Part shown: positions 491 to 55,772 of the stretch, in pieces | Layout: each line of letters starts with the position of its first letter | Numbering within the stretch: position 1 is the first letter of the stretch | Source: Octopus sinensis | Lineage: Eukaryota | Direction: 5' to 3' | Assembly: GCF_006345805.1 (NCBI RefSeq) | Contig: NC_043023.1 | Coordinates: 11,904,001-11,968,000, forward strand | Length of the DNA: 64,000 bases | Notes under the pieces: generated by a model | Seen by the model: only the letters and a program-made list of their open reading frames with translations | What the model was told of the DNA's origin: nothing | Database searches by the model: none | Program-made: the position numbers and the translations under genes

Positions 491-690
491 GGCGATCCTT
501 CGGTATAGGTACATGCGTGACTTTGTTTGCATTTCTGAAAATAACAGAAACACTTTTCTCCCACCCCCCATATATAAAAAAACCCACTTTCTTGAAATGT
601 ATCCGGTACTTATACCGAAGTTACGCCGAGTACTCATGTATTCTCCTCTATGACCATTTTCAGTATACGACTTGACCCCGTCACAGATAC

Positions 691-917
691 CTATTTCTTT
701 ATTACCCACAAGGGGCTAAACGTAGAGGGGACAAACAAGGACAGACATAGGTATTAAGTCGATTACATCGACCCCAGTGCGTAACTGGTACTTAATTTAT
801 CGACCCCGAAAGGATGAAAGGTAAAGTCGACCTCGGCGGAATTTGAACTCAGAATGTAACGGCAGACGAAATACCGCTAAGCATTTCACCCGACGTGATA
901 ACGTTTCTGCCAGCTGT
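691..917 (-). mobile_element. SINE family 1 (tRNA-like head, GTCGACTTTGCCTTTCATCCTTTCGGGGTCGAT core)
   Basis: Near-identical copies throughout the window. The core resembles the Meta-type SINE central domain, but the family assignment is not verified. Confidence 0.8.
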
Positions 918-2580: not shown

Positions 2581-3795
2581 TTACACTTGTGTATGAATAT
2601 TCACATGTGTACTTAAGTGGCCTTTTTGAGAGAATGACTCACCACAGATATCACAGTGATATGGTTTTTCACCTGTATGAATACGTCTGTGATTAGTTAA
2701 ACTGCTATTTTGAGAAAACGATTTACCACAGATATTACAAAGATATGGCTTCTCTCCTGTATGAATACGTCTGTGATTATCTAAAGTCTTGTTGTGAGAA
2801 AATGATTTACCACAAATATCACACTGATATGGGTTTTCTTGAGTATGAATAAGCGTGTGACTAATCAAATAGCTATTTGAAGAGAATGATTTACCACAGA
2901 TATTACAATGATTCGGCTTCTCACCTGTATGACTACGTTTGTGTTTAATATCTCTTGTATGAATACGTTTGTGTTTAATAAAGTCACTACTTCCAGAAAA
3001 TGATTTACCACAGATATCACAATGATATGGCTTCTCTCCTGTATGAATACGTATGTGTATAATCAAGTCACTACTTCCAGAAAATGATTTACCACAGATA
3101 TTACAATGATATGGCTTCTCTCCTGTATGAGTACGTTTATGTTTAGGCAAGTCACCACTTTGAGAAAACGATTTACCACAGATATCACACTGATATGGTT
3201 TTTCTCCAGTATGAATACGTTTGTGACGAGTCACAGTGTCAGTTCTGGAAAATGATTTACCGCAGGTATCACACATGTATGGTTTTACTCCAGTGTGAAT
3301 ACGTATGTGATTAGTCAATTGACAATGTTGGGGAAATGATTTACCACAGATATTACACTGATATGGTTTCTCTCCTGTATGAATACGTTTGTGCGTTGTC
3401 AAGTTACCACAATGAGAAAAAGATTTACCACAGATATCACACCGATATGGTTTTTCTCCTGTATGTGTAGCTTTGTGTTTAGTTAAGGTATCATTTCGAG
3501 AGAAAAATTTACCACAGATATTACAATGATATGGCTTCTCTCCTGTATGACATGGCTTTTCCCCAGTATGAATACATTTGTGACAAGTCAAAGAACCTCT
3601 TCGAGAGAATGATTTACCACAGACATCACAGTGATGTGGTTTCTCTCCTGTATCAATGCACTTGTGTTTAGCTAGGACTCTTTCTTCAGTGAATGAATTA
3701 CCACAGATATCACAGTGATATGGCTCTCTTACTTCAGGGATTTTTCGTTTAGTAAACTGATTCATTACAAGAGAATAGTTTTTCATACATATCAC
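2581..3795 (-). CDS. C2H2 zinc-finger protein A (13 fingers, no effector domain); likely start ATG at 3765
   Basis: 404-aa ORF of CxxC-HxxxH repeats with TGEKP linkers. The MNQFTKRKIPEVREP leader aligns with the [16 protein letters not shown] leader of gene E. Confidence 0.9.
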   Translation of the reverse strand: MICMKNYSLVMNQFTKRKIPEVREPYHCDICGNSFTEERVLAKHKCIDTGEKPHHCDVCGKSFSRRGSLTCHKCIHTGEKPCHTGEKPYHCNICGKFFSRNDTLTKHKATHTGEKPYRCDICGKSFSHCGNLTTHKRIHTGEKPYQCNICGKSFPQHCQLTNHIRIHTGVKPYMCDTCGKSFSRTDTVTRHKRIHTGEKPYQCDICGKSFSQSGDLPKHKRTHTGEKPYHCNICGKSFSGSSDLIIHIRIHTGEKPYHCDICGKSFSGSSDFIKHKRIHTRDIKHKRSHTGEKPNHCNICGKSFSSNSYLISHTLIHTQENPYQCDICGKSFSHNKTLDNHRRIHTGEKPYLCNICGKSFSQNSSLTNHRRIHTGEKPYHCDICGESFSQKGHLSTHVNIHTQV

Positions 3796-4204: not shown

Positions 4205-5173
4205 CTGAAATAGAAAAAGAAGCAGTAAGGCAAAGAAGACCATGAAAGTATGAAAGGCAAAGTCGACGTAGGCGGAATTTGAACTCAGAACGTAAAGACA
4301 CACGAAATACCGTCCGAACGTTTCTTATTTCTTTACTGCCCACAAGGGGCAAAACACAGAGGGGACAAACAAGCGGATTAAGTCGATTATATTGACCCCA
4401 GTGCGTAACTGGTACTTAATTTATCGACTCCGAAAAGACGAAAGGCAAAGTCAACCTCGGCGGAATTTGAACTCAGAGCGTAACGGGAGGCGAAATACAG
4501 CTAAGCACTTCGCCCAGCGTGCTAACGTTGCTGCCAGCTTGGCGCCTTTAAAGTACTGAAGATTGATATCATCATCATCACCATTATTATTTAATGCACC
4601 CGAAACGAATGAAAGTCGAAGTCGACCTCAGCGGAAAGTCCTGAATTCAAATACGGCCGAGGTCGACTTCGCCTTTCATCCCTTTCGGGAAATACTGAGT
4701 TCTATGTATTCGACTGGCAAAATTTGAAACGATCATCATCATTACTATTATTAGTATAACCTTAGAAGAAATCCTCGCCAACTTACCGATTAATCAGTGC
4801 CTCATAAACAACAGGCCAACGTTTATTAATGTGACAGCCTTCATCACATTAACCATAGTAAAATGATAGTCCTCTCATTTTACTAATTAATTATGCTACA
4901 TTACTCTGGATATTACTAATTAATTATACCACAACACTCTCATTTTACTAATTAATTTACTTTATATCACATGTAACAGTTGATAAAAGGTTTTCATAAA
5001 CAACAAATTAACATTTCACTTCGGAAATTATTTAAGACGAGCAAATACATTTCCCTATTGTTATGCCTTCCAAATAATTACTGTAACATCGAGAGGGTCA
5101 CATAATTCTATAATTTACATTATTATTATTATTATTATCATTACAGCCTAACAGAAAATCTTTGTCAACTTAC
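4205..5173 (-). other. Putative intron 1 of ZNF A (5' UTR intron)
   Basis: Minus-strand donor GTAAGT at 5173-5168 and acceptor CTTTTTCTATTTCAG ending at 4205. Equivalent sites are present in gene E, and the acceptor in gene D. Confidence 0.65.
4249..4700. mobile_element. Cluster of SINE family 1 copies and fragments in intron 1 of ZNF A
   Basis: Repeated GAACTCAGAACGT and GTCGACCTCGGCGGAATTT motifs in both orientations. Confidence 0.75.
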
Positions 5174-6034: not shown

Positions 6035-6510
6035 CCGTTTTGACCCTGTGCTTGAGGAGATCCATTGAGTCAAGGACACCAACATCAAAGATCAATGGAA
6101 ACTGCAGTTGTGAAAGCTGTGCTGGTGGCACAAAAAAGACTACCATCCGAACATGACCGATGCCAGCTCCGCCTAGACTGGCTTCTGTGCTGGTAGCACA
6201 TAAAGAGCACCGTCTGAACGTGGCCGATGACAGCGCCACCTTGACTGGCTTCCATGCCGGTGGCACATAAAAAGCACCAACGCGATCGTGGCCGTTGCCA
6301 GCCTTGCTTGGCACATGTACCGGTGGCACGTAAAAAGCACCCACTACATTCTCGGAGTGGTTGGCGTTAGGAAGGGCATCCAGCTGTAGAAACACTGCCA
6401 GATCAGACTGGAGCCTGGTGCAGCCATCTGGCTTCCCAGGCCCCGGTCGAACCGTCCAACCCATGCTAGCATGGAGAACGGGCGTTAAACGATGATGATG
6501 ATGATGTATA
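6035..6510 (+). mobile_element. 3' UTR fragment of the RTE LINE with a few GGTGGCACGTAAAAAGCA repeat units and an (ATG)n tail
   Basis: Matches the 3' UTR that follows the RT stop at 26050-26430 and at 48960-51010. Confidence 0.75.
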
Positions 6511-7030: not shown

Positions 7031-7594
7031 TCTGTAATGGTTACGGTGTATTGGAATATGGTGAGGTGAACGGATGTGATTAGGCATGTGGATGCCTTCG
7101 AAATAAACAAATGAACGACGTAGATTTATAGTTTAAATAATTTATTTACGGGACTTGCATTCGCTGTTGATATACACAGTTTTTCACTACATTAATTTGT
7201 TGTCAACTGCTATGAGTTGAGAGGAATAAAAGCATTGTACATTTGTGGATATGATGCGGTAGAACTGAATATGTTTTGTGTCTGTGTGTGCGTCGTTTAT
7301 CTGAGAAAGTTGTAGGCTATCTCGTGTCCCGATCCTTTCTGCCTGTCCCTTTGCTGACCACAGTATTTATAACAGCCATGGCAGTTACAAAGACAGACAT
7401 GCTGCAGGAGAGATTGTGTCTAAATAGGTCAGCTTCTGTCCATTTGAACTTCGCCTGACATGGCCGAGGTCATAGGTCTAAGGGAGATGATTTATCCTTT
7501 TTTGACAGGACAAAGAAAATTCCTTTGGCGCCTATTGGTTGGTGGTGGCTCAGACGAGCGAGAATCCTTAGTTTTGGTTTCGAATCTAAGCTTG

Positions 7595-7790
7595 GTGATA
7601 ATGTCTTCACAATCAACCTTGTCCCATCACATAATTTAGGAGGATCTAAATTTTTTGGAAGCATTATTGGGACTCCTATCTTCGGAAAAAGTTTCTGTGG
7701 TGGAATTCCAGGTGGCTCCAGAGAATTAATGAACTCAGTTGGGTAATGGACAGCTTGGAGATGAAAATGATGATGATGTCAAGGATGTGT
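7595..7790 (-). mobile_element. Helitron PIF1-like helicase fragment fused to the ZNF B stop codon, truncated on the left
   Basis: Encodes AVHYPTEFINSLEPPGIPPQKLFPKIGVPIMLPKNLDPPKLCDGTRLIVKTLSP, a typical Helitron helicase motif string. Near-identical to 14910-15105. Confidence 0.85.
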
Positions 7791-9203
7791 TTCCTCACCT
7801 GTATGGATGAGTTTGTGTTTAATTAAAGTATCATTCAGAGCAAATGATCTACCACAGATATCACACTGATATGGTTTCTCACCTGTATGCAAACGTACGT
7901 GAGTAGCTAAGCTACCTTTTTCAGTGAATGACTTTCCACAGATATCACACTGATATGGTTTCTCACCTGTGTGAATGCGTTTGTGTTTAGTTAAGCTACC
8001 TTTCTGAGTGAATGATTTACCACAGATATCACAGTAATAAGGTTTCTCACCTGTATGCAGACGTTTGTGAGCAGTTAAGCTACCTTTTTCAGTGAATGAC
8101 TTTCCACAGATATCGCAGTGATATGGTTTCTTACCTGTATGAATGCGTTTGTGAATAGTTAAGCTACCTTTTTGAGTGAATGATTTACCACAGATATCAC
8201 ACTGATATGGTCTCTCATCTGTATGAATGCGTTTGTGTGTGGTTAATGCATTGCTCAGAGCAAATGATTTACCACAGATATCACAGTGATATGGTTCCTC
8301 ACCTGTATGCAGATGTTTGTGAGTAGTTAAGGAAGCTTTTTGAGAGAATGACATACCACAGATATCACATTGATATGGCTTCTCTCCTGTGTGAATGCGA
8401 GTATGTTTAGTTAAGTCATTACTTCCAGGGAATGATTTACCACAGACCTCACAGTGATATGGTTTCTCATCTGTATGCAGACGTTTGTGAATAGTTAAGC
8501 TACCTTTTTGAGTGAATGATTTACCACAGATATCACATTGATATGGCTTCTCTCCTGTGTGAATGAGTTTGTGTGTGGTTAATGCTTTGTTCAGAGAAAA
8601 TGATGTACCACAGATATCACAGTGATATGGTTTCATACCTGTATGAATACGTGTATGAGTAATTAAGCTACCTTTTTCAGTGAATGACTTTTCACAGATA
8701 TCACAGTGATATGGCTTCTCTCCTGTGTGAATACGTTTGTGTTTAGTTAAATTAGTACTTACAGAGAATGATTTACCACAGATATCACAGTGATATGGTT
8801 TTTCACTTGTATGCAGACGTGTATGAGCAGTTAAGCTACTTTTTTGAGAGAATGACTTACCACAGATATCACAGCGATATGGTTTATCACCTGAATGAAT
8901 GCGTTTGTGAATACTTAATACTAAGTTTCGAGCAAACGATCTACCACAGATATCACAGTGATAAGGTTTCTCACCTGAATGAATACGTGTGTGAGTAGTT
9001 AAGTTACATTTTTGAGAGAATGTTTTACCACAGATGTCGCAGTGATATGGCTTCTCACCAGTAGAAATGCATTTATGAGTAGTTAGGTTCCCTCTCTGAG
9101 AGAAAGACTTTTTGCAGATATCACAATGGTATGATAATTTTCCTCCTTCTTTCGTCATCTCTTCACGAAGTAAGATATCCTTTACATTTCTCACATAACT
9201 CAT
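7779..9203 (-). CDS. C2H2 zinc-finger protein B (16 fingers, no effector domain), intact ORF
   Basis: 474-aa ORF with leader [24 protein letters not shown]. Acceptor TTTCAG ends at 9555. Confidence 0.92.
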
Positions 9204-10950
9204 TGTTCTACAATGTTTCTGATACTACCACAATAAATAAATATTTTTCTTGTGTTTCTTTTTATATATATATGTTTCTGTTAACTTCAGTATCCGAAGG
9301 CCATAAATTTCCTTGTAAATGTATCCATGTTTAATTAGAATGTGAAATGTAAATATTTCAGGCAGTGAGGAAGTGAAATATTGCTATCAATCTCAGTCCA
9401 GAACAAAGTATTTCACAGTTATTGATTCATAGAGATATCATATAACATGTTTATATCTATTATTTATCACATCTTCCTTTAGTCTTTCAAAGATTATTAA
9501 TATTCTTGATGTATCTCAAGTAAAAATCCGTTCATGCCACAGACGTCTGATATTCTGAAATGATATAGAAACAATATACAATAGAGAAAATAGTTAAAAA
9601 GGAGAGATTCAATAATAGAAATGTTAGTATGTTTTCATAAGGATAAACTGTGGAAATAAATTTTTAGCTAAAGGGTTACTTTCTTTTGTTATTAAAATAG
9701 GATCTATTCCATCACAAAGTAAAAAAAAAATTTCAACTAAACAGTTTGAATCTTCAAATACTGGTAGAAAGAGGTATGTATACATTATAATTTTCGTAAC
9801 ATAATTTCTGTAGTATTTCAAGATGTTTCTGACACGCACTTTGGTTCACAAGGCGGAGATCCAACATTTCTTCACTTTTTCCGGAATTTCTTCTCTCTTT
9901 CTTTCTTTTTTTTTTTTGCGAAACACGTACAAAAATACGGAGTTTATGATTCTGTGAGTTCTCGATAATCGTTTAGAACAAGTTGTTTTACACCAATTAC
10001 ACTATATTTTTATTAGTTTAAAGGCCGTGGACTGAAGATGTGAATTATCCGAGTACTCTCCCCCACCCCCCTTTCGCGTGCGCGCGTTTTTTTTTTCATC
10101 ATATTCGTTTAGAGCAAGTTGTTTTACACCTATTACACTATTTTTTTTGTCTTTTTGACCGGGTTTAACGCTTTAGTTTAACCGATGAAAGTTCTCTGGT
10201 AAACGATTTCATGTAAATAGATGTTTATGTTGAATTTGCCGGCAAAATCTTATAAAACGACATTGTTCTAAAAGCACTCGTAAAGGTTTAGCCATATTCA
10301 TTATTCTGCTTGAAGATTGAGTTCGTTAAAAGTTGTGTATTGTTTTATAGTAGAGGCTATCACTAGCCACATGTTTGGTCGACCGTTTGTGTTACCAAAG
10401 AGGACCACAGTCGTATATACGTTCCGCTTTTAGCACCTGAGAACAATCAAGTCTGCAGCATCATAAAACACAATTTACCGACAGACATTCATATAGCCAA
10501 CAAAATGTCTCGCTCTTTTAACGGACCTGAGCAATAACTGCAATAGCAACAGTAAAACAAATTATTGTACCGGTTATCACTAACCACAAAGAGGTCGGCT
10601 CTTTGTGTGGTTAAACAGAACGACAATCAGAGTACAGTAATCTTTTTGGTTTTTCTATCATTATAAGTGAATTTTTGTTTTCCGATATAACGTATAAACA
10701 GAGGTATATCTTTCGGGTGCACTTGTCCAGATTTACCCGAATATACACGTAGCCAACGATCGCCGATACAAAGCGAAAGGGACCACGCAGAAACGGTTTG
10801 CGACATTCACCTGAGTTCACTAATTAACTATCATTTTATGTGACTGCTATAATCAATTAAACTCAATTAATTACGGTATATTTCGTACACATAAAAGAAG
10901 TAAGGCATTCGGAGGTGTCGACTTAACCGAAATGTATATTAATTACTTAC

Positions 10951-14362: not shown

Positions 14363-15105
14363 CCAGCAGAGGCACCCAGCATTGACTGGCAATGAAATTT
14401 TTCCTCACATATCGGAAGAAATAAAGCAAAATAGGTTGCAAAGAAATTTGTTACTGTAATTTCAGTTTATTCTTCAATTGGGATATAATTTATTCTTTAA
14501 TTGGGAATTCAATTCTGAATTCATTAGAAAATAACAATAATAATAATGATAAAACAAAAAACAAAATTGACCACTTTTATGAAAGGAGTGAAATTCTATG
14601 ACATATGTTGAAGGAAATTATCTAAGAGCTTCTGGGTAAACAACATTCTTTTGTTTTCTGGTTTGGACCATAGATAATTAAGTCTTGCAAATTACCTGCC
14701 CTGGAGCAAGCAACAAGGTTGACCATGAGAAAAGCAAACCAGTAGATTTCAAAGACTGACCTTGACCTTTATGAACGGACAGTGCAAAGTAGTACTGGGA
14801 TTGTTCGTTTGAACAGAAAGGGCATGTCTGTTGGTTTGGTTGTAATTCTTGGAATGAAAACCTCTTCCCCAGAGGCACATCCAGTGATGATGGTAGCTTC
14901 TCTTACATCAGGTGATAATGTCTTCACAGTCAACCTTGTCCGATCGCATAATTTAAGAGGATCTAAATTTCTGGGAAGCATTATTGGGACTCCTATCTTC
15001 AGAAAAAGTTTCTGTGGTGGAATTCCAGGTGGCTCCAGAGAATTAATGAACTCAGTTGGGTAATGGACAGCTTGGAGACGAAAATGATGATGTGTCAAGG
15101 ATGTG
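14363..15105 (-). mobile_element. Helitron 3' part (helicase C-terminus, 3' UTR, hairpin and CTGG terminus) fused to the ZNF C array
   Basis: Motifs YPTEF, RNLDP.KLC, FIPRI, FALSVHKGQGQSL, CFSHGQ, VACSR and NVVYPEAL* (stop 14624-14622, with small frameshifts). Terminus CCAG-TCAATG-CTGG hairpin then CTGCTGG|T at 14363. Confidence 0.85.
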
Positions 15106-15362
15106 TTTCCTCTCCTGTATGGATGAGTTTGTGTTTAGTTAAAGTATCATTCAGAGCAAATGATCTACCACAGATATCACACTGATATGGTTTCTCACCT
15201 GTATGCAAACGTACGTGAGTAGCTAAGCTACCTTTTTGAGTGAACGACTTTCCACAGACATCACAGTGATATGATTTCTTACCTGTATGCAAACTTTTGT
15301 GAGCAGTTAAGCTACCTTTTTCAGTGAATGACTTTCCACAGATATCACAGCTATAAGGTTTC

Positions 15363-17603
15363 TCACCTGCATTTATGCGTTTTTAAGGTACTATTTACTG
15401 CAAATGACTTGCCACAGTCAGCACAGTGATATGGTTTCTCTCCTGTGTGAATGCGAGTGTGTCTAGTCAAGTCATTACTTACAGAGAATGATTTACCACA
15501 GATATTACAGTGATATGGTTTCTCTCCTGTATGCAAACGTTTGTGAGTAGTTAAGCTACCTGCTTGAGTGAATGACTTTCCACAGATATTACAGTGATAT
15601 GGTTTCTCTCCTGTGTGAATGCGAGTGTGTTTAGTTAAGCCATCACTTACAGAGAATGATTTACCACATATATCGCAATGATAGGGTTTCTCTCCTGTAT
15701 GAATACGTTTATGATGAATTACATCATTCATATGAGAGAATGTTTTACCACAAATATCACAGTGATATGGTTTTTCGCCTGTGTGAATGCGTTTATGTGC
15801 TGTGAAGGTACTATTTACTGCAAAGGACTTACCACAGATATTACAGTGGTATGGTTTCTCACCTGTATGCAAACGTATGTGAGTAGTTAAGCTACCTTTA
15901 TGATTGAACGATTTACCACAGACATCACAGTGATATGGTTTCTTACCTGTATGCAAACGTTTGTGAGCAGTTAAGCTACCTTTTTCAGTGAATGACTTTC
16001 CACAGATATCACAGCTATAAGGTTTCTCACCTGTATGCAAACGTATGTGAGCAGTCAAGTTACCTTTTTGAGTGAATGACTTTCCACAGATATCACAGTG
16101 ATATGGTTTCTCTCCTGCGTGAATGCGTTTGTGTTTAGTTAAGCTACCTTTTAGAGCAAATGACATACCACAGATATCACATTGATATGGCTTCTCTCCT
16201 GTATGAATACGAGTGTGTGTAGTTAAGTCTTTACTTCCAGGGAATGATTTACCACAGATATCACAGTGATATGGCTTCTCACCCGTATGAAGACGTTTGT
16301 GAATAGTTAAGCTACCTTTTTGAGAGAATGACTTACCACAGATATCACAGCGATATGGTTTATCACCTGTATGAATGCGTTTGTGAATACTTAGTACTAA
16401 GTTTCGAGCAAATGACCTACCACAGATATCACAGTGATAAGGCTTCTCTCCTGTATGAATACGTTTATGATGAATAAAATCATTCATCTGAGAGTATGTT
16501 TTACCACAAATATCACAGTGATATGGTTCTTCGCCTGTGTGAATGCGTTTATGAGCTGTGAAGGTACTATTTACTGCAAAGGACTTACCACAGATATTAC
16601 AGTGGTATGGTTTCTTACCTGTATGAATATGTGCATGAGTAGTTAAGTGAACTTTTTGAGAGAATGATTTACCACAGATATCACAGTGATATGGTTTCTC
16701 ACCTGTGTGAATGCGTTTGTGTGTAGTTAAGTTACTAAATCCAGGGAATGTTTTACCACAAATATCACAGCGATATTCTTTTTCTCCTGTGTGACTGCAT
16801 TTATGAGTTTTTAAGGTACTATTTGCTGTAAATGACTTGCCACAGTCAGCACAGTGATATGGTTTCTCTCCTGTGTGAATGCGAGTGTGTCTAGTTAAGT
16901 CATTACTTACAGAGAATGATTTACCACAGATATTACAGTGATATGGTTTCTCTCCTGTATGCAAACGTTTGTGAGTAGTTAAGCTACCTGTTTGAGTGAA
17001 TGACTTTCCACAGATATTACAGTGATATGGTTTCTCTCCTGTGTGAATGCGAGTGTGTTTAGTTAAGCCATCACTTACAGAGAATGATTTACCACATATA
17101 TCGCAATGATAGGGTTTCTCTCCTGTATGAATACGTTTATGATGAATTACATCATTCATCTGAGAGAATGTTTTACCACAAATATCACAGTGATATGGTT
17201 TTTCGCCTGTGTGAATGCGTTTATGTGCTGTGAAGGTACTATTTACTGCAAAGGACTTACCACAGATATCACAGTGATATGGTTTCTCACCTGTATGAAT
17301 ACGTGTGTGAGTAGTTAAGTTACATTTTTGAGAGAATGATTTACCACAGATATCACAGCGATATGGTTTCTCACCTGTATGAGAGTATTTATGGTGAGTT
17401 AAGTTACCTTTGTGAGAGAATGATTTACCACAGATATCACAGTGATATGGTTTCTCTCCAGTAGAAATGCATTTATGAGTAGTTAGGTTCCCTCTCCGAG
17501 AGAAAGACTTTTTGCAGATATCACAACAGTACGATAATTTTCCTCCTTCTTTTGTCATCTCTTCAGGAAATAAGCCATCCTCTACATTTCTCACATAACT
17601 CAT
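15363..17603 (-). CDS. C2H2 zinc-finger protein C (25 complete fingers plus a truncated 26th; 3 more fingers out of frame to 15095)
   Basis: 746-aa ORF. An 8-nt deletion near 15368 gives HKCR*. Paralog of B with near-identical flanks (9204-9790 vs 17604-18170). Acceptor ends at 17953. Confidence 0.85.
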
Positions 17604-19600
17604 TGTTCTACAATGTTTCTGATACTACCACAATAAATAAATATTTTTCTTGTGTTTCTTCTTATATATATATGTTTCTGTTGACTTCAGTATCCGAAGG
17701 CCATAAATTTCCTTGTAAATGTATCCATGTTTAATTAGAATGTGAAATGTAAATATTTCAGGCAGTGAGGAAGTGAAATATCTATCAATCTCAGACAAGA
17801 ACACAGTATTTCAGTTATTGATTCACAGATATATTATATAAACATGTTTATATCTATTATTTATCACATCTTCCTTTAAGTCTTTCAAAGTTTATTAATA
17901 TTCTTGATGTATCTCTAGTAAAAATCCATCCATGCCACAGATGTCTGATATTCTGAAATGATATAGAAATAATATACAATAGAGAAAATAGTTAAAAAGG
18001 AGAGATTCAATAATAGAATTGTTAGTATGTATTTATAAGGATAAACTGTGGAAATAAATTTTTAGCTAAAGGGTTACTTTCCATTGTTATTAAAAGTGGA
18101 TCTATTCCATCTCAATCACAAAGTAAACAAAAAAATTTTAACTAAACAGTTTGAAACTTCAAATACTGGTAGAATTTCTTTGAACGTTTTTGACAAAATT
18201 TCCTTTTTTAGAAGTTATTTCATGTTAAAGTTGTCGTATTTGGGTAATTTCAACCAATCAACGATGTGTATTCGGTTGAAGGGAGCTACAACTTCCGGGT
18301 AATCTCTACTAAACGTCACCACTCTGCTGTATTCATCACGTATTCCATACTAATGAGCAATGTATATCCCTTACTCCTTCCCTCCCTTATACACTATCAA
18401 CCAGCATCCAGTGAGCGAATTTGTCACTGCCACCACAGTTACCCTATTATCCGGTGTATAAGCCGCTATTTGTTTCGTTTTACCTTCATGTTTTGATAAT
18501 GTTATTTTTAATCTAAGAAAGACTTTTATATTTATTTCTTTATTGCCATCAGGGAGCTAAACATTGAGGGGACAGACAAGGACTAAGGCATTAAGTCGAC
18601 TACATTAACCCCAATTGTATAGGCTCATAAGGGACATGTTTGGATAGGGTTGCTAGATTAGAAAACCATATATACGGGACACTTTTAAAATCTCTATCTC
18701 TATATATATAAATTTATACATGCCTACACACGCAATATATTATATAAAAGCAGAGAGATAAGTTAAAAACATAATGAAATTATTTAAATGGGTTATGAGG
18801 TCAAAATTATTTAATACAAGCTAAAAAAAATTGGTGCAGCATCATTCATTTTTCTCTAGCAGAGATAAATAAATACTTGCCCAGGTAGAGTTGTAGAAAG
18901 ATTGAAGGAATACTAGGCTATTAAAAATCGCAGGAAACGTACCATGTTTTTTGTGTATGTGTGCATGTATGCTGTGAACAGAATTTTCTTTATGGTGTAT
19001 CATGTAATGCTGAGAACCCAATGTTTGTATATCTTTCTAAGCCGTCCAAGAATCACTATACATAACTGAGCCAGGTTTGATGTATTTTTGAATTAGTGGA
19101 AGCAATGTCGCTTTGTCACGCTTCTGACCAGTCACAGCAACAACAAAACGACGTTTGCTAATCCGCTCAATTCCAGCGAACAACCAAACATAAACACTTA
19201 AATTAGAATATACAATCTATAAATGGAATTAATTGATTATATGTATGAGAGCAATCAAGACGATTGCAACGGGAAAAAACATTCAAACTATTAACGTGGA
19301 TCATTTTGTCAGAAAAAAAAGCAGAGATATGTAGCAAGTGATAATTTAAGATAAAACAATAGACGGCTTTGAATGAGGACAATTAGCAAATGGAATATTT
19401 ACTGTAATAAAAGAAATTTAAAATTTGGTGCTTTTTCGTGGCAATACCAAATAAAATACAATTTAGATTTTATTCGCCTAATTAAAGAAGTTTACCGGAG
19501 TACAGAATTTATATCGATGTCAGACTAGCAATATTCAAAGCTTTCAATGTCAACAAGCCGGGTTCATTGGCTTTTATTAAAGAAATGTGTTATATCTTAC

Positions 19601-24814: not shown

Positions 24815-26430
24815 TGTAGCCTAAGATAAACCCCTATACATAGCTATTGTGGACTTGGAGAAAGCCTTTCAAAGGGTCCCGCAATCCCTTATCAGGTGGG
24901 CAATGCAGAAACTGGGGATTGACTAATGGTTAATAAGGGCTGTACAGGCCCTATACAGAGAGGTCATTAGTAAGGTTAGGATTGGCAATGAGTATAGTGA
25001 AGAATTCCGGGTAGAAGTAGGGGTCCACTAAGGATTAGCCCTCAGTCCCCTTTTATTCATCATAGTCCTCCAGGCAATAGCAGAGGAATTCAAGACAGGT
25101 TGCCCTTGGGAGCTCCTCTATGCTGATGACCTGGCCCTCATAGCAGAATTACTACCGTAACTAGAGAAGAAATTTCAGGTGTGGAAGCAAGGTTTAGAAT
25201 CAAAAGGTGTTAGGGTCAATGTAGCAAAGACCAAAGTTCTAGTAAGTAGGAAGGCGAACTCATCACACACCCCCTTAGGTAGGCGGCCCTGCTCGATCTG
25301 TAGAAAAGATGTAGGTAGAAACTCCATAAAATGTACCCAGTGTAAGCTATGGACACATAAGAGGTGCAGCAACATCAAAGGAAAATTAACCGAGAAGATA
25401 GCTTTCATGTGCAGCAGATGCACAGGGGCAATAGACACCATTGATACTCAGAAAACAGATTCCATTACACTCCAGGGGAAGAAACTAGAAGTAGTTGATA
25501 GCTTCCGCTACCTGGGTGGCCAAGTTAGTAGTGGAGGTGGGTGCTCAGAGAGAGTTACCACTAGAATAAGAATAGCCTGGGCAAAGTTCAGAAAGCTTCT
25601 ATCCCTACTGGAGACAAAGGGCCTCTCGCTCTGAGTGAAAGGTAGATTGTACAATGTATGTGTGCGAACTGTCATTCTTCACGGCAGTGAAACATGGGCC
25701 ATGATTGCTGAGAACATGCGTAGGCTAAAAAAAAATGAAACTAGCGTGATCTGCTAGATGTGTAATGTCAGTGTGCAACACAACAAAGTGTAAGTGCCCT
25801 GAGAGAAATGCTGGACATAAGAAGCATTGGATGTGGCGTGCAAAAGAGACGTTTGCGCTGGTATGGTCATGTACAACAGATGGATGAGGAGAGCTGTATG
25901 AAGAAGTGCCACTCTCAAACAGGGTAGAGGTAGACCCAGGAAGATATGGGATGAGGTAGTCAAGCATGACCTTCGAATGTTGGGCCTCACAGAGGCAATG
26001 ACGAAAGACCAAGACCTCTGGAGATATGCTGTGACTGCAAAGACCCAGCAAATAAAGTGAGTTCACAGCTGTATCCCACACCAGTTGTACAGAACCAGCC
26101 CCAGCTCACTCAAAAGTACCTTGGATCGTAGGGCAACATGCTGTGCTTGAGAAGACCTACTGAGTCAAGTACATCAACATCAAAGTGAAAATCAAATGGA
26201 AATTGTAGTCGTGATACCCATGCCAGTGGCACATAAAAAGCACCATCCGAACGTGGCTGATGACAGCACCGCCTTGACTGGACTCTGTGTCAGTGGCAAG
26301 TGAAAAGCACCAACCAATCGTGGTCATTACCAGCCTCCTCTGCTGGTGGCACATAAAAAGCACCCACTACACTCATGGAGTGGTTGGCATTAGGAAGGGT
26401 ATCTAGCTGTAGAAACACTGCCAGATATTG
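24815..26430 (+). mobile_element. 5'-truncated, degraded RTE LINE (RT with embedded PHD finger, plus 3' UTR)
   Basis: [19 protein letters not shown] and CSIC..CTQC..H..C..CSRC motifs; several stops. Same family as 48961-53500. Confidence 0.85.
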
Positions 26431-26854: not shown

Positions 26855-27985
26855 TTCTTATTTCTTTATTGTCCACAAGGGGCTAAACATAGAGGGGACA
26901 AACAAAGACAGACAAAGGGATTAAGTCGATTACGTCAACCCCAGTGCATAACTGGTACTTAATTTATCGACCCCGAAAGGATGAAAGGCAAAGTCGACTT
27001 TGGCTGAATTTGAACTCAGAACGTAATGGCAGATGAAATGCCGCTAAGCATTTCGTGCTAACGTTTCTGCCAGTTCGCCGCCTTACTCATTTCACTCTTC
27101 TGAACATTATTTAATGTCCGTTTTGTTTGCGGTCACTTGTTGGGCAGCTTGACATGAGCCATGTGTGCTTTTATTGTCTGTTTCGGGATGGTTTCTGGGT
27201 CCCTTTACAAGGCATCAGCACCAGTGCATTGTGTGTGTCACCATCACCGATGCATTTTCGGTGACACCAACATCTGCGATTTTTACGTGGGACCATCACC
27301 AGTGCTTTTACCTGTGCTCTTTATGTGACAACACCACCGACAGGGTCAACAAGTACCCTGCAAGACTAAAACACCCACAACAGGAAGTGGCCCGAAGGTA
27401 TTACAGAACAAGTGTGACTTTGTGCCAGTTGAGATCTTCAAGGTATAGAGGAGTCGCTACGTTCTGAGTTCAAATTCCGCCGAGGTCAACTTTGCCTTTC
27501 ATCCTTTCAGGATCGATAAATTAAGTACCAGTTACACACTGGGGTCAATATAATCGACTTAATCCCTTTGTCTGTCCTTGTTTGTCCTCTCTGTGTGTAG
27601 CCCCTTGTGGGTAGTAAAGAAATAGGTATTTCGTCTGCCGTTACGTTCTGAGTCGAATTTGCCTTTCATCCTTTCAGGGTCAATTAAATAAGTACCAGTT
27701 ACGCACTGGGGTCGATGTAATCGACTTAATCCGTTTGTCTGTCCTTGTTTGTCTTCTCTGTGTTTAGCCCCTTGTGGGCAGTAAAGAAATTGGTATTTCG
27801 TCACCCGCTACATTCTGAGTTCAAATTCCGCCAAGGTCGACTTTGCCTTTCATCCTTTCGGGGTCGATTAAATAAGTACCAGTTACGTACTGGGGTCGAT
27901 ATAATCGACTTAATCCGTTTGTCTGTCCTTGTTTGTCCTCTTCGTGTTTAGCCCCTTGTGGGTAGTAAAGAAATAGGTATTTCAT
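26855..27985. mobile_element. SINE family 1: one minus copy (26855-27085) and three head-to-tail 5'-truncated plus copies (27455-27985)
   Basis: The core and tail sequence is repeated four times. Confidence 0.8.
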
Positions 27986-28500
27986 CTGTCTCTGTCACAC
28001 ACAGACAGAAAGAGAGAGAAATCAACAGAAAAAGTCGAGCTTTTAACAAATTTCCATAGGAAGTGGTTATCCGAAGTTTTAGACATTCCTTCTTCAGGGA
28101 ACAAGACTAAAATAATGAGAAATATGGAAGAGATTAACCTCCTATAAGTTAGAAAGAAAACTGATTGTTTTTATTTAATTTCACTCCTGTCAACTTCTTC
28201 CTGTACAAGGACTCTCTCCGAAAAGTTGGATTTTCCACTCACCATGGTAATTTTGCCGTACACTTTCCATTCATTACAAGTAGACAAGAGACGTCTTTCC
28301 AATGCAGACCATCACCAATGTCTTTGAATTCTGTGAAGGCATTCAATCACGCGTTCAATGCATTCACTCAAACTGCCACTGTATATAATGTGTAATTCTA
28401 TTTACAAATGATAATTATTATTATTTAATTATTGTAACATAATCCTGTTGATTAAATGTAAAATCTGAAAATCTAAAAGTTTTGTTTTCTTCTTTTTCAG

Positions 28501-32157: not shown

Positions 32158-32580
32158 TATTGGCCAACCTTATTACTGACTTTCACTGATCTGGGTAGAA
32201 TAGTGGATGTTAGAATGTTGTTGTTGATGATGAAAACGATGATATGCGATTGATGATGATTGAGGATAATAATGATTGATGGTGATGTCTGATGATTGAT
32301 GATGATGCGATTGATGATGACTTCAACTGAAAAACTGTACTTTTTTTTCAATCAGTTTTGAAAATGGTGAAGAATTTCGTAAGTTAGCTTTGCCATTATC
32401 AATCTGGTGTTTGGAACATAAATTAACATATATTAAACATAAATTAACATAAAATTTTGAATGAAAGGTTTTAATTTTGATCACTTTAACCCTTTTGTTA
32501 CCATAAACTTGTCCTTTACAGGTGCCGGTGGCACGTAAAAAGCACACAGCATATTCTGTAGAGTGGTTGGTGCTAGGAAA

Positions 32581-32785
32581 AGGCGGCGAGCTGGCAGAAT
32601 TGGTAGCATGCCGGATGAAATGCTTAGCAGTATTTCGTCTGCCTCTATGTTCTGAGTTCAAATTCCACCGAGGTCGACTTTGCTTTTCATCCTTTTGGGG
32701 TCGATGAAATAAGTACCAGTTATGCACTGGGGTTGATGTAATTGACTATCCTCCTACCCCAAATTTCAGGCCTTGTGCCTATAGT
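32581..32785 (+). mobile_element. SINE family 1, host of the CR1 insertion
   Basis: Head GGCGGCGAGCTGGCAGAA. The SINE plus insert is flanked by a 15-bp duplication GGTTGGTGCTAGGAA (32565-32579, 34745-34759). Confidence 0.8.
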
Positions 32786-34733
32786 TAGTTAGTTAGTTAA
32801 TTTGGCTCAAAAGCAAATAGCAAGGCCATGTAGAGGGACATGGAGTTAAATACAGGGTGGTGTTCATGTAAAGAGTTCAGGCCACTTGAGGCAAAGGGAG
32901 GCTTTGAACAAAGCGGTAGTCGGCATCTTCACCATCTTGTCTGGCAGCTTGTTCCACGGATCCGCAACCCGGACGGTGAAAGCTCCTCTCCTTTGATTGA
33001 GATGAAATCGTCGCAGGTAGAGCTTTTCGGAATGACCCCGCAGCCGACGCTCTGGAGCAGGAGTGAAGAACAGCTCTTTCGAGAGGTTACACTTTCCGCT
33101 TATGATGTTGTGGACGAGAATGAGATCACCACGGCGGCGGCGTTTTTCAAGAGAATAAAGGTCGAGCGTCCTCAGCCTTTCTTCATAAGACAAATTTTTG
33201 AGACCATGAACCATGCGGGTAGCCAGCTTCTGGACTCTTTCGAGATGCTGTATGTCTTTGAGGAGATAAGGAGAAGAGGCTTGAATCCCGTACTCCAATA
33301 TGGGTCTCACCAGTGTGACATAGAGTGGTAGGAATATGGCTGCTGTGAGCATTCCGAATGACCGTCGAATCAAGAACAGAATTCCGCGTGCTTTGTTGGC
33401 AGCATGGACGCACTGGGCTGAAGGCGAAAAGGAGGAATCCACCAAGATACCCAGGTCCTTTACCTGATCGGTCCTCTCCAGCAGCAGACGACCCGGCTCG
33501 AAATCAAGTTGAGTTGCAGGAGGAGAGCCAACAGGCAGATGACAGCACTTTGACACGTTCAGACACAGGTCCCATTCGTTAGACCACTTCCAAATTTGGT
33601 GGAGGCATCGACGAAGATCCTCTATATCACCGCGAGGAGCGACCAGTTTGATATCGTCGGCAAATAGAAGGGTGTGTTGCGTGAGGTCGTCGGGCAAGTC
33701 ATTTATGAAGACTAAGAACAATAAGGGCCCAAGCACTGAACCTTGAGGCACGCCACTGCTTGCACTGGAGACGTCGGACCGTGAACCATTAACTTGGATT
33801 TGGAAGGAGCGATCTGAGAGGAAGGCACCAACCCATCGTACAATATCCGGATGGAAACTATATGCTTGAAGCTTGACAAGTAATAGGCGGTGGTTTACCG
33901 AGTCAAAAGCTTTGGCAAAGTCCAATAAAACGATGTCAACAGCATCACTATCATCGAGGATGCGCATCACCAATTCTTCCATTACCAGTAAGTTGGTCAA
34001 GCATGATCTCTTTGGCACGAAGCCGTGTTGGGAATCAGAGATAGAGCTGTGTTTTGGAGGTGGAGCATCATACTTTTCTGAAGGATGGTTTCGAACATCT
34101 TGCTGATTATTGATGTAAGGGAAACCGGTCGGTAGTTAAGCGGGTCTTCGCGGCTCCCTTTCTTGAAAATTGGGCAGATTATCGCTGTTCTCCAGTCCAC
34201 AGGTATAACACCCGTCGCCAATGACATATTGAATAGACATGTTAAGGGCTCGCAGATGACCGGAGCCAACGCTTTGATAACCCGTGGGTGTATGCTGTCA
34301 GGGCCGTGACCCTTGTTGACATCGAGGCCTTGAATAACATGTTTGACTTCGTCCCGCGTGATGACCAATCGAAGCATTGGAGGTACCAATCTATCAAATG
34401 GAGGGGGTTCACGACCATCATCTTGTTTGAAAATAGTTGAAAAAGCCTCGGCAAATAATTGACTCTGTTGATAAGGGTCCCCAATCGATACACCTGTTGA
34501 GTCTACCAACGTTGCAATCTGGTTGTTCAAGCGGGAATTCCGTTGGACATGGGCAAAGAAGGTTTTTGGATTGCTACTGGCATTTGCCGCGATTTTGTAT
34601 TCATAACTGAAGCGTTCTTCCTTTTCAATTTTCACGGCTCGGTCTCATTGAGTTTTGTACACCTCAAAAGCTGCAGTCGAATCCAGATTTTTGAATTCAG
34701 CCCAAGCAATATCTCTGAGTCGACGTTCTCGTT
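32786..34733 (-). mobile_element. 5'-truncated CR1-like LINE with a frameshift near 34010
   Basis: LDFAKAFDSV, GVPQGSVLGPLLF and FADD motifs; (AACT)n tail; TATAGT duplicated at 32780-32785 and 34734-34739. Confidence 0.9.
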
Positions 34734-35185: not shown

Positions 35186-35850
35186 AAGGCGGTAAGCTGG
35201 CAGAATCGGTAGCACGCCGGGCGAAATGCTTAGCGGTATTTCATCTGCCGTTACGTTCTGAGTTCGAATTCTGCCGAGGTTGACCTTGCCTTTCATCCTT
35301 TTGGGGTTGATAAAAATTAAGTACCAGTTATGCACTGGGGTCGATATAATCGACTTAACCCCTTTCCCTGTCCTTGTTTGTCCCTTCTGTGTTGTCCCTT
35401 GTGGGCAGTAAAGAAATAAGAAAGATCACCCTCTACGCAGATTCCTACTTATTGCTAATTTTTATTTACACATTTCATGTTACCTTCTATCTCTTGCTTG
35501 CCCCAGCACCACTGTGGCCATGCTGGAGCATAGCCTTGAGGAATTTTTTGTCAAACAAATCAACCCCAGTTGGGATGAGGTACTGAAGGTTGATCTCACA
35601 ACGCTGAGGTTTCGGAAGGAGATAATATATATTTCTTTACTACCCACAAGGGGCTAAACACAGAGAGGACAAACAAGGACAGACAAACGGATTAAGTCGA
35701 TTATATCGACCCCAGTGCATAACTGGTACTTATTTAATCGACCCCGAAAGGATGAAAGGCAATGTCGACCTTGGCGGAATTTGAACTCAGAACAAATGAA
35801 TATACCACTAATCATTTTGCCCAGTGTGCTAATGATTCTGCCAGCTCGCC
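35186..35850. mobile_element. Two SINE family 1 copies in inverted orientation (35186-35420 plus, 35630-35850 minus)
   Basis: Core sequence present on both strands. Confidence 0.8.
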
Positions 35851-37084
35851 ACCTTCCTGAAGGAGATAATAAAAGACTGAAATATGTGGTACATTGCTGT
35901 AGTCAAGATGACCTGCCCACCACCACAGAATTAATATCTTAAAACCTTGGTACCACATAAAAAAACCATTGGTGTTGGTACCGGGTAAAAATCACTGGTG
36001 CTGGTACTACGTAAAAAGCACCCAGTACACTGTAAAGTGGTTGGCATTAGGAAGGGCATCCAGAAGGTTAAGAGGCATGTATGTGTATGTTTGTATATGT
36101 ATACACACACACATACACACATGTATATGTGTGTGTGTATGTGTGTAGATGTGGTATGTGTATGTGTGTACACCGTACAACCTGTGAAAACTGACACCTA
36201 TGTTGGCATGTTTACGTCTTCATAACTTAGCGGTTCGGCAAAAGAATAAGTCCTGGGTCGATTTGTTCGAATAAAGGCGATGCTACAGCATGGCCACAAT
36301 TAAAGGACTGAAACAAATAAAAGAATATACATACATACATATATACATACATACATACATATATACACACGTACATACATACATACATACACACATACAT
36401 ACATACATACACACAAACACACACATACATATATATAAACATATATACACACATACATACATACATACATACGCACACACACACACACACATACATATAC
36501 ACACACACACATACATACATATATATATATTTAGCAGAAGAGGGAGTGGTGTTTCCAAGCAGGAAAAGAAATATATAGGAAAATGTGTTGCTGAAAATGC
36601 ACTTAAATTTCGAGACCTCTACCATAACAAATGCTTGTGTGTGTTACCAAGAAATTTATAGAGAGTGAAAAGAAAAAAAGACTTCTAAGCAAGCAATTTT
36701 AGACTTGTGTTTTAAAAAGAAATCTACAAGTCTGTCTACGAGTGCTTGTGAATCGGTGATCACATTTTCAAGTGATGGTGTGCGTGAGTCTAATGCGAGT
36801 GACAGTGATTCAGAAAACAATTCTAATAATAATACTTCTTATTATAAATGATCTCAACATTCTTTTTACTTTACATAAAATATTCTTTACATTCTGCTGT
36901 TGTTTTATTGTCATTTATTTACAAGTATTATAAATTTTATTGATAAAATATTTTTCTGGGAACAACTTATAACATTGCTAATATGGGAAATTATGGCACC
37001 ATTTTGCGAGTTCTCACTTTACGAGCGATCTCTGAGAACAAATTAACTTGTATATTGAGGCATTACTGTATATACCTCCCTACA

Positions 37085-37700: not shown

Positions 37701-38577
37701 AAAATTTTAGAATAAAAAAAAAAACACTGCCTATCTTAATTTTGAAAAATAAATTTAAAAAAAACTCCCATTATTTATGGAATGACACAGAATATTTGTC
37801 TATCCTTCACTCACCGATTTACGTGTCTTTCTGACTGTTTGTCTGTCTGTCTCTCTCCATCTCCATCTCTCACCCTCTGCACTATAACGCTGACATATCG
37901 TTTGGTGTTAAGGGAGACTACTCACAAATATATTGTACGTGAGTTATGTCCCTTGAACAATGCCTTGAAACCGCTTGACTGCCATTTTTCTGAAATTAAC
38001 CTGTTAAGGTAGACTACTCTCAAGTATAGGTGGTTCATACTTAGCTCTTTGTGGGTAGTAAAGAAATAGGTTTATATTTGAGAGTTCTCTCCCTTGACAC
38101 CATTTATCTGCAAAATAGATTTTATCGTCCGACGGTTACTGGTTTCAATTCTTGGACAACCGCCATGCTGGAGCACCACATCAACGTGTTTAATCACACT
38201 CATCTACGGCTGGGCTTATCTCTCTTCAGGCTGCTACTCATTCCTTCGTTCTCCTTTTGTCGAATTGCTAAGTTACGATGACGTAAACAGCCAAAACCGA
38301 AAATGTAGCGGTGACTAGGGACAAACACAAGTCACAGATAGGGAAATATATGCGTGTGCATGTGTGTGTGTGTGTGTGTGTCTGTATGTGTGTGTGTGTT
38401 TGTGTGTCTGTATGTGTGTGTGTCTGTGTGTGTCTGTATGTGTGTGTGTGTTTGTGTGTCTGTATGTGTGTGTGTCTGTGTGTGTCTGTATGTGTGTGTG
38501 TCTGTATGTGTGTGTGTGTTTGTGTGTCTGTATGTGTGTGTGTCTGTGTGTGTCTGTATGTGTGTGTGTTTGCGCGC

Positions 38578-43079: not shown

Positions 43080-45138
<2,059 letters not shown>

Positions 45139-46119
45139 GAGAATAAAGAAATGGGAATAATGAATAAAAGGTTACACTGAAGTTGATTTTGTCTATGTGT
45201 TTTCATCATTATCGCTGTTATCATCATCATCCTTTAGTGAATTTTTTTTTTTACTGGCATGGGTGGCACAGTGTGACATGAGCTGGCAAACCATAATGCT
45301 GCACTAGGTTCCAATCTGATTTGTTTGGGTTTCTTTGGGTGTATTCTCCTAATGCTAACCTGTTCACAGTTTATGCTGTTTGCTTCAAATATATATGTAC
45401 GTATGCACACACATATATGTATGTGTGTGTATATGTATACCATCATTATCATCAGCATCCACTGAAAAAAATATATATTTCCAATGATACTGAGGTGGGA
45501 GGGCGCCCCACGTTTTCCAAGCAAAAATAAGGAGTTTACAGCGCATTGCAAGGTCAGGGTACTTGATTCCATGCAAAAAATCTGAGTTTTTTTGTTTGTC
45601 TTTATGAAAATCTTGTGGGTGAAAATATCAAAATTTACCCAAATTCTTCTGGACTCTAACTTCTCCGAAAAAAATTGTGACAACAAATTCGTATGTAATC
45701 GTAATCTAAACGATCTAAAAAGTATTATCATCGTAATCTACCTCATCAGAAATGTAGTCACGGAAAATTTTGAATTACCATTAATCTACCAAATCATCAT
45801 CATCATCATTTAACGTCCGCTTTCCATGCTAGCATGGGTTGGACGATTTGACTGACGTCTGGCAAACCAGACTCCAATCTGATCTGGCAGAGTTTCTACA
45901 GCTTGATGCCCTTCCTAACGCCAACCACTCCGGGAATGTAGTGGGTGTTTTTTACGTGCCACTGGCACAGGGGCCAGTGCAGGCTGGCAAACGGCCACAG
46001 TCGGTTGGTGCTTTTATATGTCACCGATACAGACGCCAGTCAGGCGACGCTAGTATCTGCCGCATTCAGACGGTGCTTTTGATGTGTCACCAGCACGAGT
46101 GTCTTAACTACTATTTCAT

Positions 46120-55007: not shown

Positions 55008-55048
<41 letters not shown>

Positions 55049-55542: not shown

Positions 55543-55574
<32 letters not shown>

Positions 55575-55732
55575 CATATATACATACATACATATATATA
55601 CATACATATATACATACATACATATATATATACATATATATACATACATATATATATACATATATATATATATACATACATATATATATACATATACATA
55701 CATACATATATATATACATATACATACATATA

Positions 55733-55772
<40 letters not shown>

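What the first reader, a model, noticed from the sequence alone, without database searches (positions are those of the whole stretch)
14363..15110. Helitron 3' end fused to the ZNF C array: donated stop codon and UTR, possible rolling-circle gene capture
The last linker runs GE-ETHP* directly into a degenerate 'SIDT...QAVHYPTEF' helicase segment, so the final residues and stop codon are Helitron-derived. The Helitron continues through the helicase C-terminus (NVVYPEAL*) and AATAAA signals (14471-14466, 14494-14489) to a hairpin plus CTRR end at 14363. It replaces the HTQV*/conserved-UTR end of A-type genes. Helitrons are known to capture and copy host genes. A ZNF array in place of the Rep/helicase interior is what capture would look like, and could be a route for ZNF expansion. 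A matching 5' TC end upstream of B or C was not found, so simple insertion followed by deletion remains possible.
Basis: partly seen in the sequence, partly recalled or inferred. Interest (0 to 1): 0.8.

Follow-up and report, generated by a model that had tools for sequence, protein, structure and literature searches.

The report
Helitron remnant abutting zinc-finger genes
A dead 712-base tail of a rolling-circle transposon (Helitron) sits directly behind a zinc-finger gene in what is almost certainly an octopus genome, and a nearby second copy looks like ordinary local duplication rather than the transposon capturing and spreading the gene.

Summary
The sequence features are largely real. On the minus strand a C2H2 array ends ...HTGEETHP*. 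From 15074 down to 14363 there is the decayed 3' end of a Helitron: Pif1-type helicase C-terminus, stop, two AATAAA, short hairpin, CTGG|T. Three Octopus sinensis copies end at the same base, so the terminus is confirmed.

Three claims fail:
- In array C the ETHP* stop (15097-15095) is out of frame. The 746-aa ORF stops at 15365-15363, at an out-of-register junction made by a 99-100% identical internal duplication.
- Helitron homology starts 20 nt after the ETHP* stop. The stretch holding the stop cannot be assigned to Helitron or to finger DNA.
- Gene capture has no support.

Paralogue B (7779-9203) carries the same junction at about 96% identity. It keeps only 164 nt of Helitron and lacks the terminus. 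The B/C shared block runs from an intron point (18174/9769) to a point inside the helicase remnant (14911/7594). Its flanking bases do not fit an A|T insertion. No other piece of this Helitron family is in the window.

Best reading: old Helitron insertion behind the gene, then a deletion, then local segmental duplication. Genome-wide copies and transcript ends could not be checked. Low interest.

The parts
14363..15074 (-). 5'-truncated, decayed 3' end of a canonical Helitron (712 nt)
   Evidence: It is 79-87% identical to five octopus copies from 15074 downward. tblastn homology begins at residue Q87 of P0078. Distance to a 5-copy consensus is JC 0.108.
14618..15074 (-). Pif1-like helicase C-terminal pseudo-ORF, from the 2B domain to the stop TAA at 14620-14618
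   Evidence: Pfam Pif1_2B_dom E=1.2e-11. At least 3 frame changes relative to intact relatives. It shares a 17-nt deletion with L001, L002 and L005.
14466..14501 (-). Helitron-borne poly(A) hexamers: ATTAAA at 14501, AATAAA at 14494-14489 and 14471-14466
   Evidence: L004 has both AATAAA hexamers and L005 the first of them. Use by the zinc-finger gene was not tested.
14363..14389 (-). Subterminal hairpin (arms 14389-14386 and 14379-14376) and the 3' end CTGG (14366-14363), followed by host T
   Evidence: L001, L004 and L005 lose homology at the same base. One arm pair differs from L001 by changes on both sides (G-C in L001, A-T here).
15075..15106 (-). 32-nt junction stretch of undetermined origin; it contains the ETHP* stop TGA at 15097-15095
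   Evidence: Semi-global alignment against the finger consensus and the Helitron consensus is not better than shuffles.
15098..15362 (-). Three terminal fingers of array C plus the ...GEETHP tail, out of frame with the main ORF
   Evidence: The last two units are 96-98% identical to the last two of B.
15357..15377 (-). Out-of-register recombination junction CATAAATGCAG|GTGAGAAACC, which creates TGA 15365-15363
   Evidence: It is the 3' edge of a 99-100% identical internal duplicate (15845-15367 copies 17273-16795).
15363..17603 (-). Main ORF of zinc-finger gene C (746 aa, 26 fingers)
14911..18174 (-). Block of C shared with B: about 220 nt of intron, the last exon with the array, and the first 164 nt of the Helitron remnant
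   Evidence: Flanks differ by 4.1-4.3%. A conserved splice-acceptor-like TTTCAG ends at 17953.
7779..9203 (-). Zinc-finger gene B: intact 474-aa ORF with 16 fingers, ending ...HTGEETHP* (TGA 7781-7779)
7594..7757 (-). B's copy of the Helitron remnant (164 nt), cut off inside the helicase; no Helitron UTR, hairpin or CTRR
   Evidence: The remainder (14363-14910) has no other copy in the window.
7594..9769 (-). Whole duplicated block in B
   Evidence: Junction bases are ...CCTCT|TTCTACC at the 5' side and ...ATCACC|AAGCTT at the 3' side.

Best explanation
A Helitron inserted behind a zinc-finger gene in the same orientation. It belonged to an octopus family whose 3' end is: helicase C-terminus, stop, (ATT)n, two AATAAA, short hairpin, CTAG. 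The insertion left a canonical 3' junction (CTRR|T).

A later deletion or illegitimate end-joining removed the gene's own end (the HTQV* plus UTR seen in A-type paralogues) and all of the Helitron 5' of the helicase 2B domain. This fused a decayed linker/finger start to codon Q of ...QAVHYPTEF. A TGA in the scrambled 32-nt junction stretch became the new stop (...GEETHP*).

A 2.2-3.3 kb piece was then copied about 5 kb downstream by ordinary DNA-level duplication, giving B. The piece held part of the intron, the last exon and 164 nt of Helitron.

C then remodelled its array. A very recent 480-bp internal duplication has an out-of-register edge that now stops the ORF 265 nt early.

The Helitron piece is passive. 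At most it supplies 3'-UTR sequence and poly(A) signals to C.

Shown: the anatomy, the homology limits, the shared junction and the breakpoints. Inferred: the order of events and the deletion mechanism.
For: Helitron identity and true 3' end.

Homology starts at 15074 and 7757 in both paralogues, while all 13 octopus relatives read on upstream with ...KKYKSVDSVLDEN.

Same junction in B and C at 96%, so it predates their split.

C is continuous with the Helitron consensus across 14911, where B breaks off.

C is also weakly continuous with a third intron-like copy across 18174 (17 of 1000 shuffles reach the score). B shows nothing there.

No other helicase piece, 3' terminus or family upstream non-coding segment is in the window.

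The five other family copies are themselves cut off upstream at different points, so 5' loss is the usual fate.

B and C flanks differ equally in intron (4.1%) and Helitron (4.3%), which looks neutral.

The frameshift in C sits at the edge of a 99-100% identical block.
Against: - The pre-insertion site cannot be rebuilt. Nothing downstream of the Helitron end resembles the A-type 3' UTR.
- The family's exact 5' terminus was not defined, so its absence is shown only for about 1.8 kb of upstream helicase and a roughly 450-nt upstream non-coding segment.
- Only one 64-kb window and five other copies were examined. Dispersed ZNF-Helitron copies elsewhere in the genome are not excluded.
- B is a dispersed local copy rather than a clean tandem repeat, and the mechanism that placed it is unknown.
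Confidence: 0.72

Rival explanations
1. Helitron gene capture and mobilisation. The intron-exon-array piece lies inside a chimeric non-autonomous Helitron whose 5' end is at about 18173 (TC TACCAG...) and whose 3' end is at 14363. B would be a transposed copy that terminated early.
For: - The shared block starts T|TCTACC, so a TC is present.
- A 38-nt copy of that start exists at 61030-61067.
- In Helraiser the 5' end is essential, while 3' truncations and read-through do occur (PMC4778049). A copy lacking the 3' terminus is therefore not impossible.
Against: - In B the base before TC is T, not A. The base after the block is A, not T.
- Homology between C and the 61030 copy continues about 85 nt upstream of the supposed end, so it is not a terminus.
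- No match of this start occurs in six octopus Helitron loci.
- The family's real upstream non-coding segment is absent from the window.
- Five other family copies have no zinc fingers within the 4-10 kb fetched on either side.
Confidence: 0.05
2. The Helitron piece arrived already 5'-truncated. It would have been an incomplete rolling-circle product, or a fragment used as filler in repair of a break at the end of the array. No later deletion is then needed.
For: - A 32-nt unassignable stretch sits at the junction, as filler DNA would.
- No relic of the original UTR lies beyond the Helitron.
- 5'-truncated copies are common in this family.
Against: - The 3' junction is the exact family terminus next to a T in AT-rich DNA. 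That points to a normal transposase-made insertion, not a random fragment.
- Sequence alone cannot separate 'truncated on arrival' from 'truncated later'.
Confidence: 0.18
3. Assembly artefact: the array-Helitron join, or the frameshift in C, is a misjoin in repetitive sequence.
For: The frameshift in C lies at the edge of a 99-100% identical 480-bp repeat. Assemblers can err in such places.
Against: The array-Helitron junction is present twice with about 4% divergence and one indel, so it is real. The doubt applies only to the frameshift in C.
Confidence: 0.04

Closest known systems
Canonical (Helitron1-type) animal Helitrons, e.g. Helibat/Helraiser (PMC4778049)
   Same: Pif1-like helicase C-terminus, a short palindrome about 12 nt before the 3' end, a CTRR end (family CTAG, as in Helibat1), a 3' junction to T, and an AT-rich flank.
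   Different: Only the last 712 nt survive here. There is no 5' TC end and no Rep. The helicase is frameshifted. The hairpin stem is 4-5 bp, against 19 nt in Helraiser.
Helitron gene-fragment capture (maize Helitrons; the bat HelibatN3 NUBPL fragment, described in PMC4778049)
   Same: A host gene fragment (part of an intron plus an exon) lies directly next to Helitron sequence in the same orientation.
   Different: Captured fragments lie between two Helitron ends and are found in dispersed copies. Here Helitron sequence is on one side only. The second copy is local, lacks the terminus and has non-A/T junction bases.
Transposon-derived 3' UTRs and poly(A) sites (general phenomenon; stated from general knowledge)
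   Same: In C the sequence after the stop is Helitron-derived, and the first AATAAA hexamers are the Helitron's own.
   Different: Use in transcripts is untested. In B the first AATAAA (7146) lies outside the Helitron piece. The Helitron piece diverges as fast as the intron.
Local duplication and unequal recombination in clustered C2H2 zinc-finger genes. The large expansion in octopus is stated from general knowledge; octopus repeat history is in PMC13282606.
   Same: There are four to five arrays in 64 kb with 84-nt units. Internal block duplications reach 99-100% identity. One paralogue pair shares its flanks.
   Different: Nothing unusual, apart from the Helitron remnant that serves as a marker for the B/C lineage.

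Membership tests
Helitron (canonical) | Pif1-like SF1 helicase coding sequence | tested here: met
   Pif1_2B_dom E=1.2e-11. 65-81% identity to octopus copies. A related copy, L006, has the PIF1 domain (5.8e-28) upstream.
Helitron (canonical) | Rep/HUH nuclease domain in autonomous members | tested here: inconclusive
   Not present in the window. Not found in the sampled copy L006, which is decayed and interrupted by a mariner element. No full-length copy could be fetched.
Helitron (canonical) | 3' end CTRR | tested here: met
   CTGG at 14366-14363. The relatives end CTAG, TTAG and CTAG at the same aligned base.
Helitron (canonical) | Short palindrome about 10-12 nt upstream of the 3' end | tested here: met
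   CCAG...CTGG at 14389-14376, 12 nt from the end. It is weak (-3.4 kcal/mol, z=0.13) but positionally conserved in four copies, with one pair changed on both sides.
Helitron (canonical) | 5' end TC | tested here: not met
   The element is cut off at 15074, inside the helicase. No family 5' sequence lies elsewhere in the window.
Helitron (canonical) | Insertion between A and T without target-site duplication | tested here: inconclusive
   The 3' host base is T in 4 of 4 copies. The 5' side is lost, and no empty site is available.
Helitron-captured gene (chimeric mobile element) | Host fragment bounded by Helitron sequence on both sides | tested here: not met
   Helitron sequence lies only 3' of the array. 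Upstream of 18174 and 9769 nothing matches the family.
Helitron-captured gene (chimeric mobile element) | Copies share both element ends and sit in A|T sites | tested here: not met
   B lacks the 3' terminus. B's junction bases are T (5' side) and A (3' side). Only two linked copies are known.
Helitron-captured gene (chimeric mobile element) | Dispersed copies genome-wide | not testable with these tools
   No octopus genome can be searched by DNA. Exact-protein look-ups of B, C and A2 found nothing. The metagenome scan gave 0.
Transposon-derived 3' UTR / poly(A) site | Transcripts of the host gene end within the transposon | not testable with these tools
   Only hexamer positions are known.

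The most novel reading that the evidence does not exclude
The intron-exon-array piece plus the Helitron tail is a chimeric element that Helitron enzymes can still copy from a cryptic 5' end near 18173. B would be one early-terminated product. Rolling-circle copying would then be one route by which octopus zinc-finger genes multiply.
Probability: 0.04. Interest if true: 0.6.

Novelty: new member of a known kind. Interest (0 to 1): 0.18.

Why it matters
As it stands this is an ordinary case. A transposon remnant replaced the end of a fast-evolving zinc-finger gene and was then carried along by local duplication.

Its practical value is as a marker. The junction dates the B/C lineage relative to the A-type paralogues, and it shows how quickly these arrays are reshaped. 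There is a 99-100% identical internal duplicate with a frameshifting edge.

It would matter more only if a genome-wide search showed many unlinked copies with shared ends. That would link Helitrons to the well-known zinc-finger expansion in octopus.

Tried and rejected
- Protein search with the whole B protein. It was swamped by vertebrate zinc-finger proteins and gave nothing useful.
- Protein search with the B/C N-terminus. Only short proteins came back. No orthologue with the ETHP tail was found, and none matches the window closely.
- Exact-product look-ups of B, C and A2. None is on record, so the window's own record, its orthologues and any empty site could not be fetched.
- Metagenome scan for the junction. 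No matches.
- Attempt to define the family 5' end from L001, L002 and L006. The copies are decayed, start at different points, and one has a nested mariner. Only a shared upstream non-coding segment of about 450 nt was obtained, and it is absent from the window.
- Pfam scan of the translated region upstream of C.
- Assigning the 32-nt junction stretch to finger or Helitron DNA. Not significant either way.
- Search for a relic of the A-type UTR beyond the Helitron. None found.
- The 38-nt repeat at 61030 was considered as a transposon terminus. It was rejected because homology with C continues upstream of it.

Full report
WHAT THE WINDOW IS

The window is AT-rich eukaryotic DNA. C2H2 zinc-finger arrays lie on the minus strand at 2581-3795 (A1), 7779-9203 (B), 15095-17603 (C) and 57267-58508 (A2). 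Fragments lie on the plus strand at 43094-43426 and 44602-44880. Around them are LINE remnants, a SINE-like repeat and satellites.

The helicase-like stretch in the finding is 65-81% identical to proteins of Octopus sinensis and O. bimaculoides. The window is therefore almost certainly from an octopus. Its own record could not be located.

THE OBSERVATION

On the minus strand the last finger of C reads ...[28 protein letters not shown], with TGA at 15097-15095. From 15074 the sequence reads QAVHYPTEFINSLEPPGIPPQKLFLKIGVPIMLPRNLDP... This matches Pfam Pif1_2B_dom at E=1.2e-11. With at least three frame changes it continues to ...NVVYPEALR*, with TAA at 14620-14618.

I fetched six loci, covering five related copies (L006 is L004 with longer flanks):
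- O. sinensis: L001, L002, L004/L006, L005.
- O. bimaculoides: L003.

All five align to the window at 79-87% identity from 15073/15074 downward.

L004 and L005 share the whole non-coding tail with the window: a microsatellite, then ...AATTAAAGAATAAAT...GAAGAATAAA..., then a short palindrome. L004 carries both AATAAA hexamers and L005 the first of them.
- L001: CTAG|T
- L004: TTAG|T
- L005: CTAG|T
- Window: CTGG|T at 14366-14363

The terminus motif is unique in the window, with none expected by chance. The hairpin is only 4-5 bp and is not stable beyond shuffles. It sits at the same place in all four copies. One pair is G-C in L001 and A-T in the window.

So the Helitron 3' end, its AATAAA signals and its terminus are real.

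WHAT DOES NOT HOLD

First, in C the ETHP* stop is out of frame with the array.
- The 746-aa ORF (17603-15363) ends ...HKCR* at TGA 15365-15363.
- The cause is the junction CATAAATGCAG|GTGAGAAACC, which joins two finger units 8 nt out of register at a CAG.
- Units 15845-15425 are 99-100% identical to units 17273-16853. The junction is the edge of a very recent internal duplication, or possibly an assembly error.
- ETHP* closes an intact ORF only in paralogue B (474 aa, 16 fingers).

Second, the stop codon cannot be credited to the Helitron.
- Every one of 13 octopus relatives reads ...KKYKSVDSVLDEN before QAVHYPTEF.
- The window departs from them upstream of CAAGCTG (15074), which is 20 nt 3' of the stop.
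- The finger linker is recognisable up to ...GAG(G)AAAC(A)CAT.
- The 32 nt in between (15106-15075) fit neither source better than shuffled sequence. For C, 183 of 500 shuffles match the finger score and 120 of 500 match the Helitron score. For B the counts are 35 and 157 of 500.

THE SECOND COPY

Gene B has the same junction. Window 7594-7884 is 96.2% identical to 14911-15200. Beyond 7594 the similarity stops, whereas C runs on in step with the Helitron consensus. The rest of the remnant (14363-14910) has no second copy anywhere in the window. B therefore has 164 nt of Helitron and no Helitron UTR, hairpin or CTRR.

Upstream, B and C are alike from TTCTACCAGTAT... (9769 and 18174) through a conserved TTTCAG acceptor-like site to the start codon. 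That acceptor-like site is also seen in the A-type genes.

The copied block is therefore about 220 nt of intron, the last exon and 164 nt of Helitron. Nothing outside it is shared. Mismatch is 4.1% in the intron part and 4.3% in the Helitron part, with no sign of constraint on either.

WAS THE COPY MADE BY HELITRON ENZYMES?

Work on Helraiser shows that the 5' end is essential. The 3' end is dispensable, and early termination and read-through both occur (PMC4778049). The missing terminus in B is therefore not decisive by itself, so I tested the 5' boundary.
- The block does begin T|TCTACC. In B the host base before TC is T and the base after the block is A, not A and T.
- A third 38-nt copy of the boundary sequence lies at 61030-61067. 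This could have suggested a transposon end. However, C and that copy stay weakly similar for about 85 nt upstream of the boundary (17 of 1000 shuffles reach the score). B shows nothing there (964 of 1000). The boundary is B's breakpoint, not an element end.
- The boundary sequence is absent from all six fetched loci.
- The window holds no other piece of this family. Absent are the roughly 1.8 kb of helicase upstream of the junction, the roughly 450-nt upstream non-coding segment shared by L001, L002 and L006, and any second 3' terminus.
- The other family copies have no zinc fingers within the 4-10 kb fetched on either side. They are themselves cut off upstream at different points.

MOST LIKELY HISTORY (INFERRED)

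1. A Helitron of a partly defective subfamily inserted behind the gene. The window, L001, L002 and L005 share a 17-nt deletion in the helicase. The copy is JC 0.108 from a rough 5-copy consensus. That is close to the Helitron burst at JC 0.09, about 25 million years, reported for O. vulgaris (PMC13282606).
2. A deletion or end-joining event removed the gene's own end and the 5' bulk of the element. The 32-nt scrambled junction with a new TGA is what remains.
3. The block was duplicated locally, giving B. Pairwise difference is about 4%.
4. C's array was reshaped and acquired the frameshifting junction.

A variant in which the piece arrived already truncated cannot be separated from this by sequence alone.

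UTR DONATION

In C the first poly(A) hexamers after either stop are the Helitron's own (14501, 14494, 14471). In B the first is at 7146, outside the remnant. Any donation of UTR or poly(A) signal therefore applies to C at most, and it is untested.

LIMITS

- No octopus genome could be searched by DNA, so dispersed copies are not excluded.
- The family's exact 5' end and its Rep domain were not recovered.
- The original insertion site could not be rebuilt.

VERDICT

This is a real Helitron remnant fused to a zinc-finger array. The claims of a donated stop codon and of gene capture are not supported. The case is ordinary and of low interest.

Noticed in passing
window 43094-44880: A plus-strand zinc-finger array is split by a minus-strand LINE reverse-transcriptase ORF (43491-44582, RVT_1 E=2.5e-26). 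Fingers lie on both sides, at 43094-43426 and 44602-44880.
   Followed up: partly
window 15367-15845 and 16795-17273: About 480 bp (5.5 fingers) of array C is duplicated within the array at 99-100% identity. It is far younger than the B/C split, and its 3' edge is out of register and truncates the ORF.
   Followed up: yes
window 49134-50962; also 59887-60257, 6117-6506, 45793-46097, 54184-54440, 26141-26426: A GC-rich 62-nt satellite runs for 29.5 copies with a 311-nt higher-order period. Short related arrays are scattered through the window on both strands.
   Followed up: no
window 18138-18175 (-), 9733-9769 (-), 61030-61067 (+): A 38-nt motif, ATTCTACCAGTAT..GTTTAGTT, is kept at 92% identity in a third place where the surrounding sequence has almost fully diverged. 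The reason for its conservation is unknown.
   Followed up: partly
window 687-915, 4322-4548, 26855-27085, 27455-27988, 32580-32747, 35186-35855, 61493-62107: A SINE-like repeat of about 230 nt occurs in more than 10 copies, including a triple tandem at 27455-27988. It is also abundant in the O. sinensis loci.
   Followed up: no
window 38354-40902 (+), 51011-52630 (-), 32864-34018 (-): Further LINE remnants: one with endonuclease plus RT, one with RT plus a PHD-like finger (539-aa intact ORF), and one with RT only.
   Followed up: no
alignment A6 columns 347-363 (window about 14741): The window copy and O. sinensis L001, L002 and L005 share a 17-nt frameshifting deletion in the helicase. L003 and L004 lack it. 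This implies a defective subfamily that was copied in trans.
   Followed up: partly
window 54442-55072 and 55459-55893: Two long AT-rich compound microsatellite blocks (ATAC/ATAT units) lie in the region with the strongest GC skew of the window.
   Followed up: no
L006 7123-7842: A mariner-type transposase (Transposase_1, E=3.4e-23) is nested in the O. sinensis Helitron copy just upstream of its helicase.
   Followed up: no
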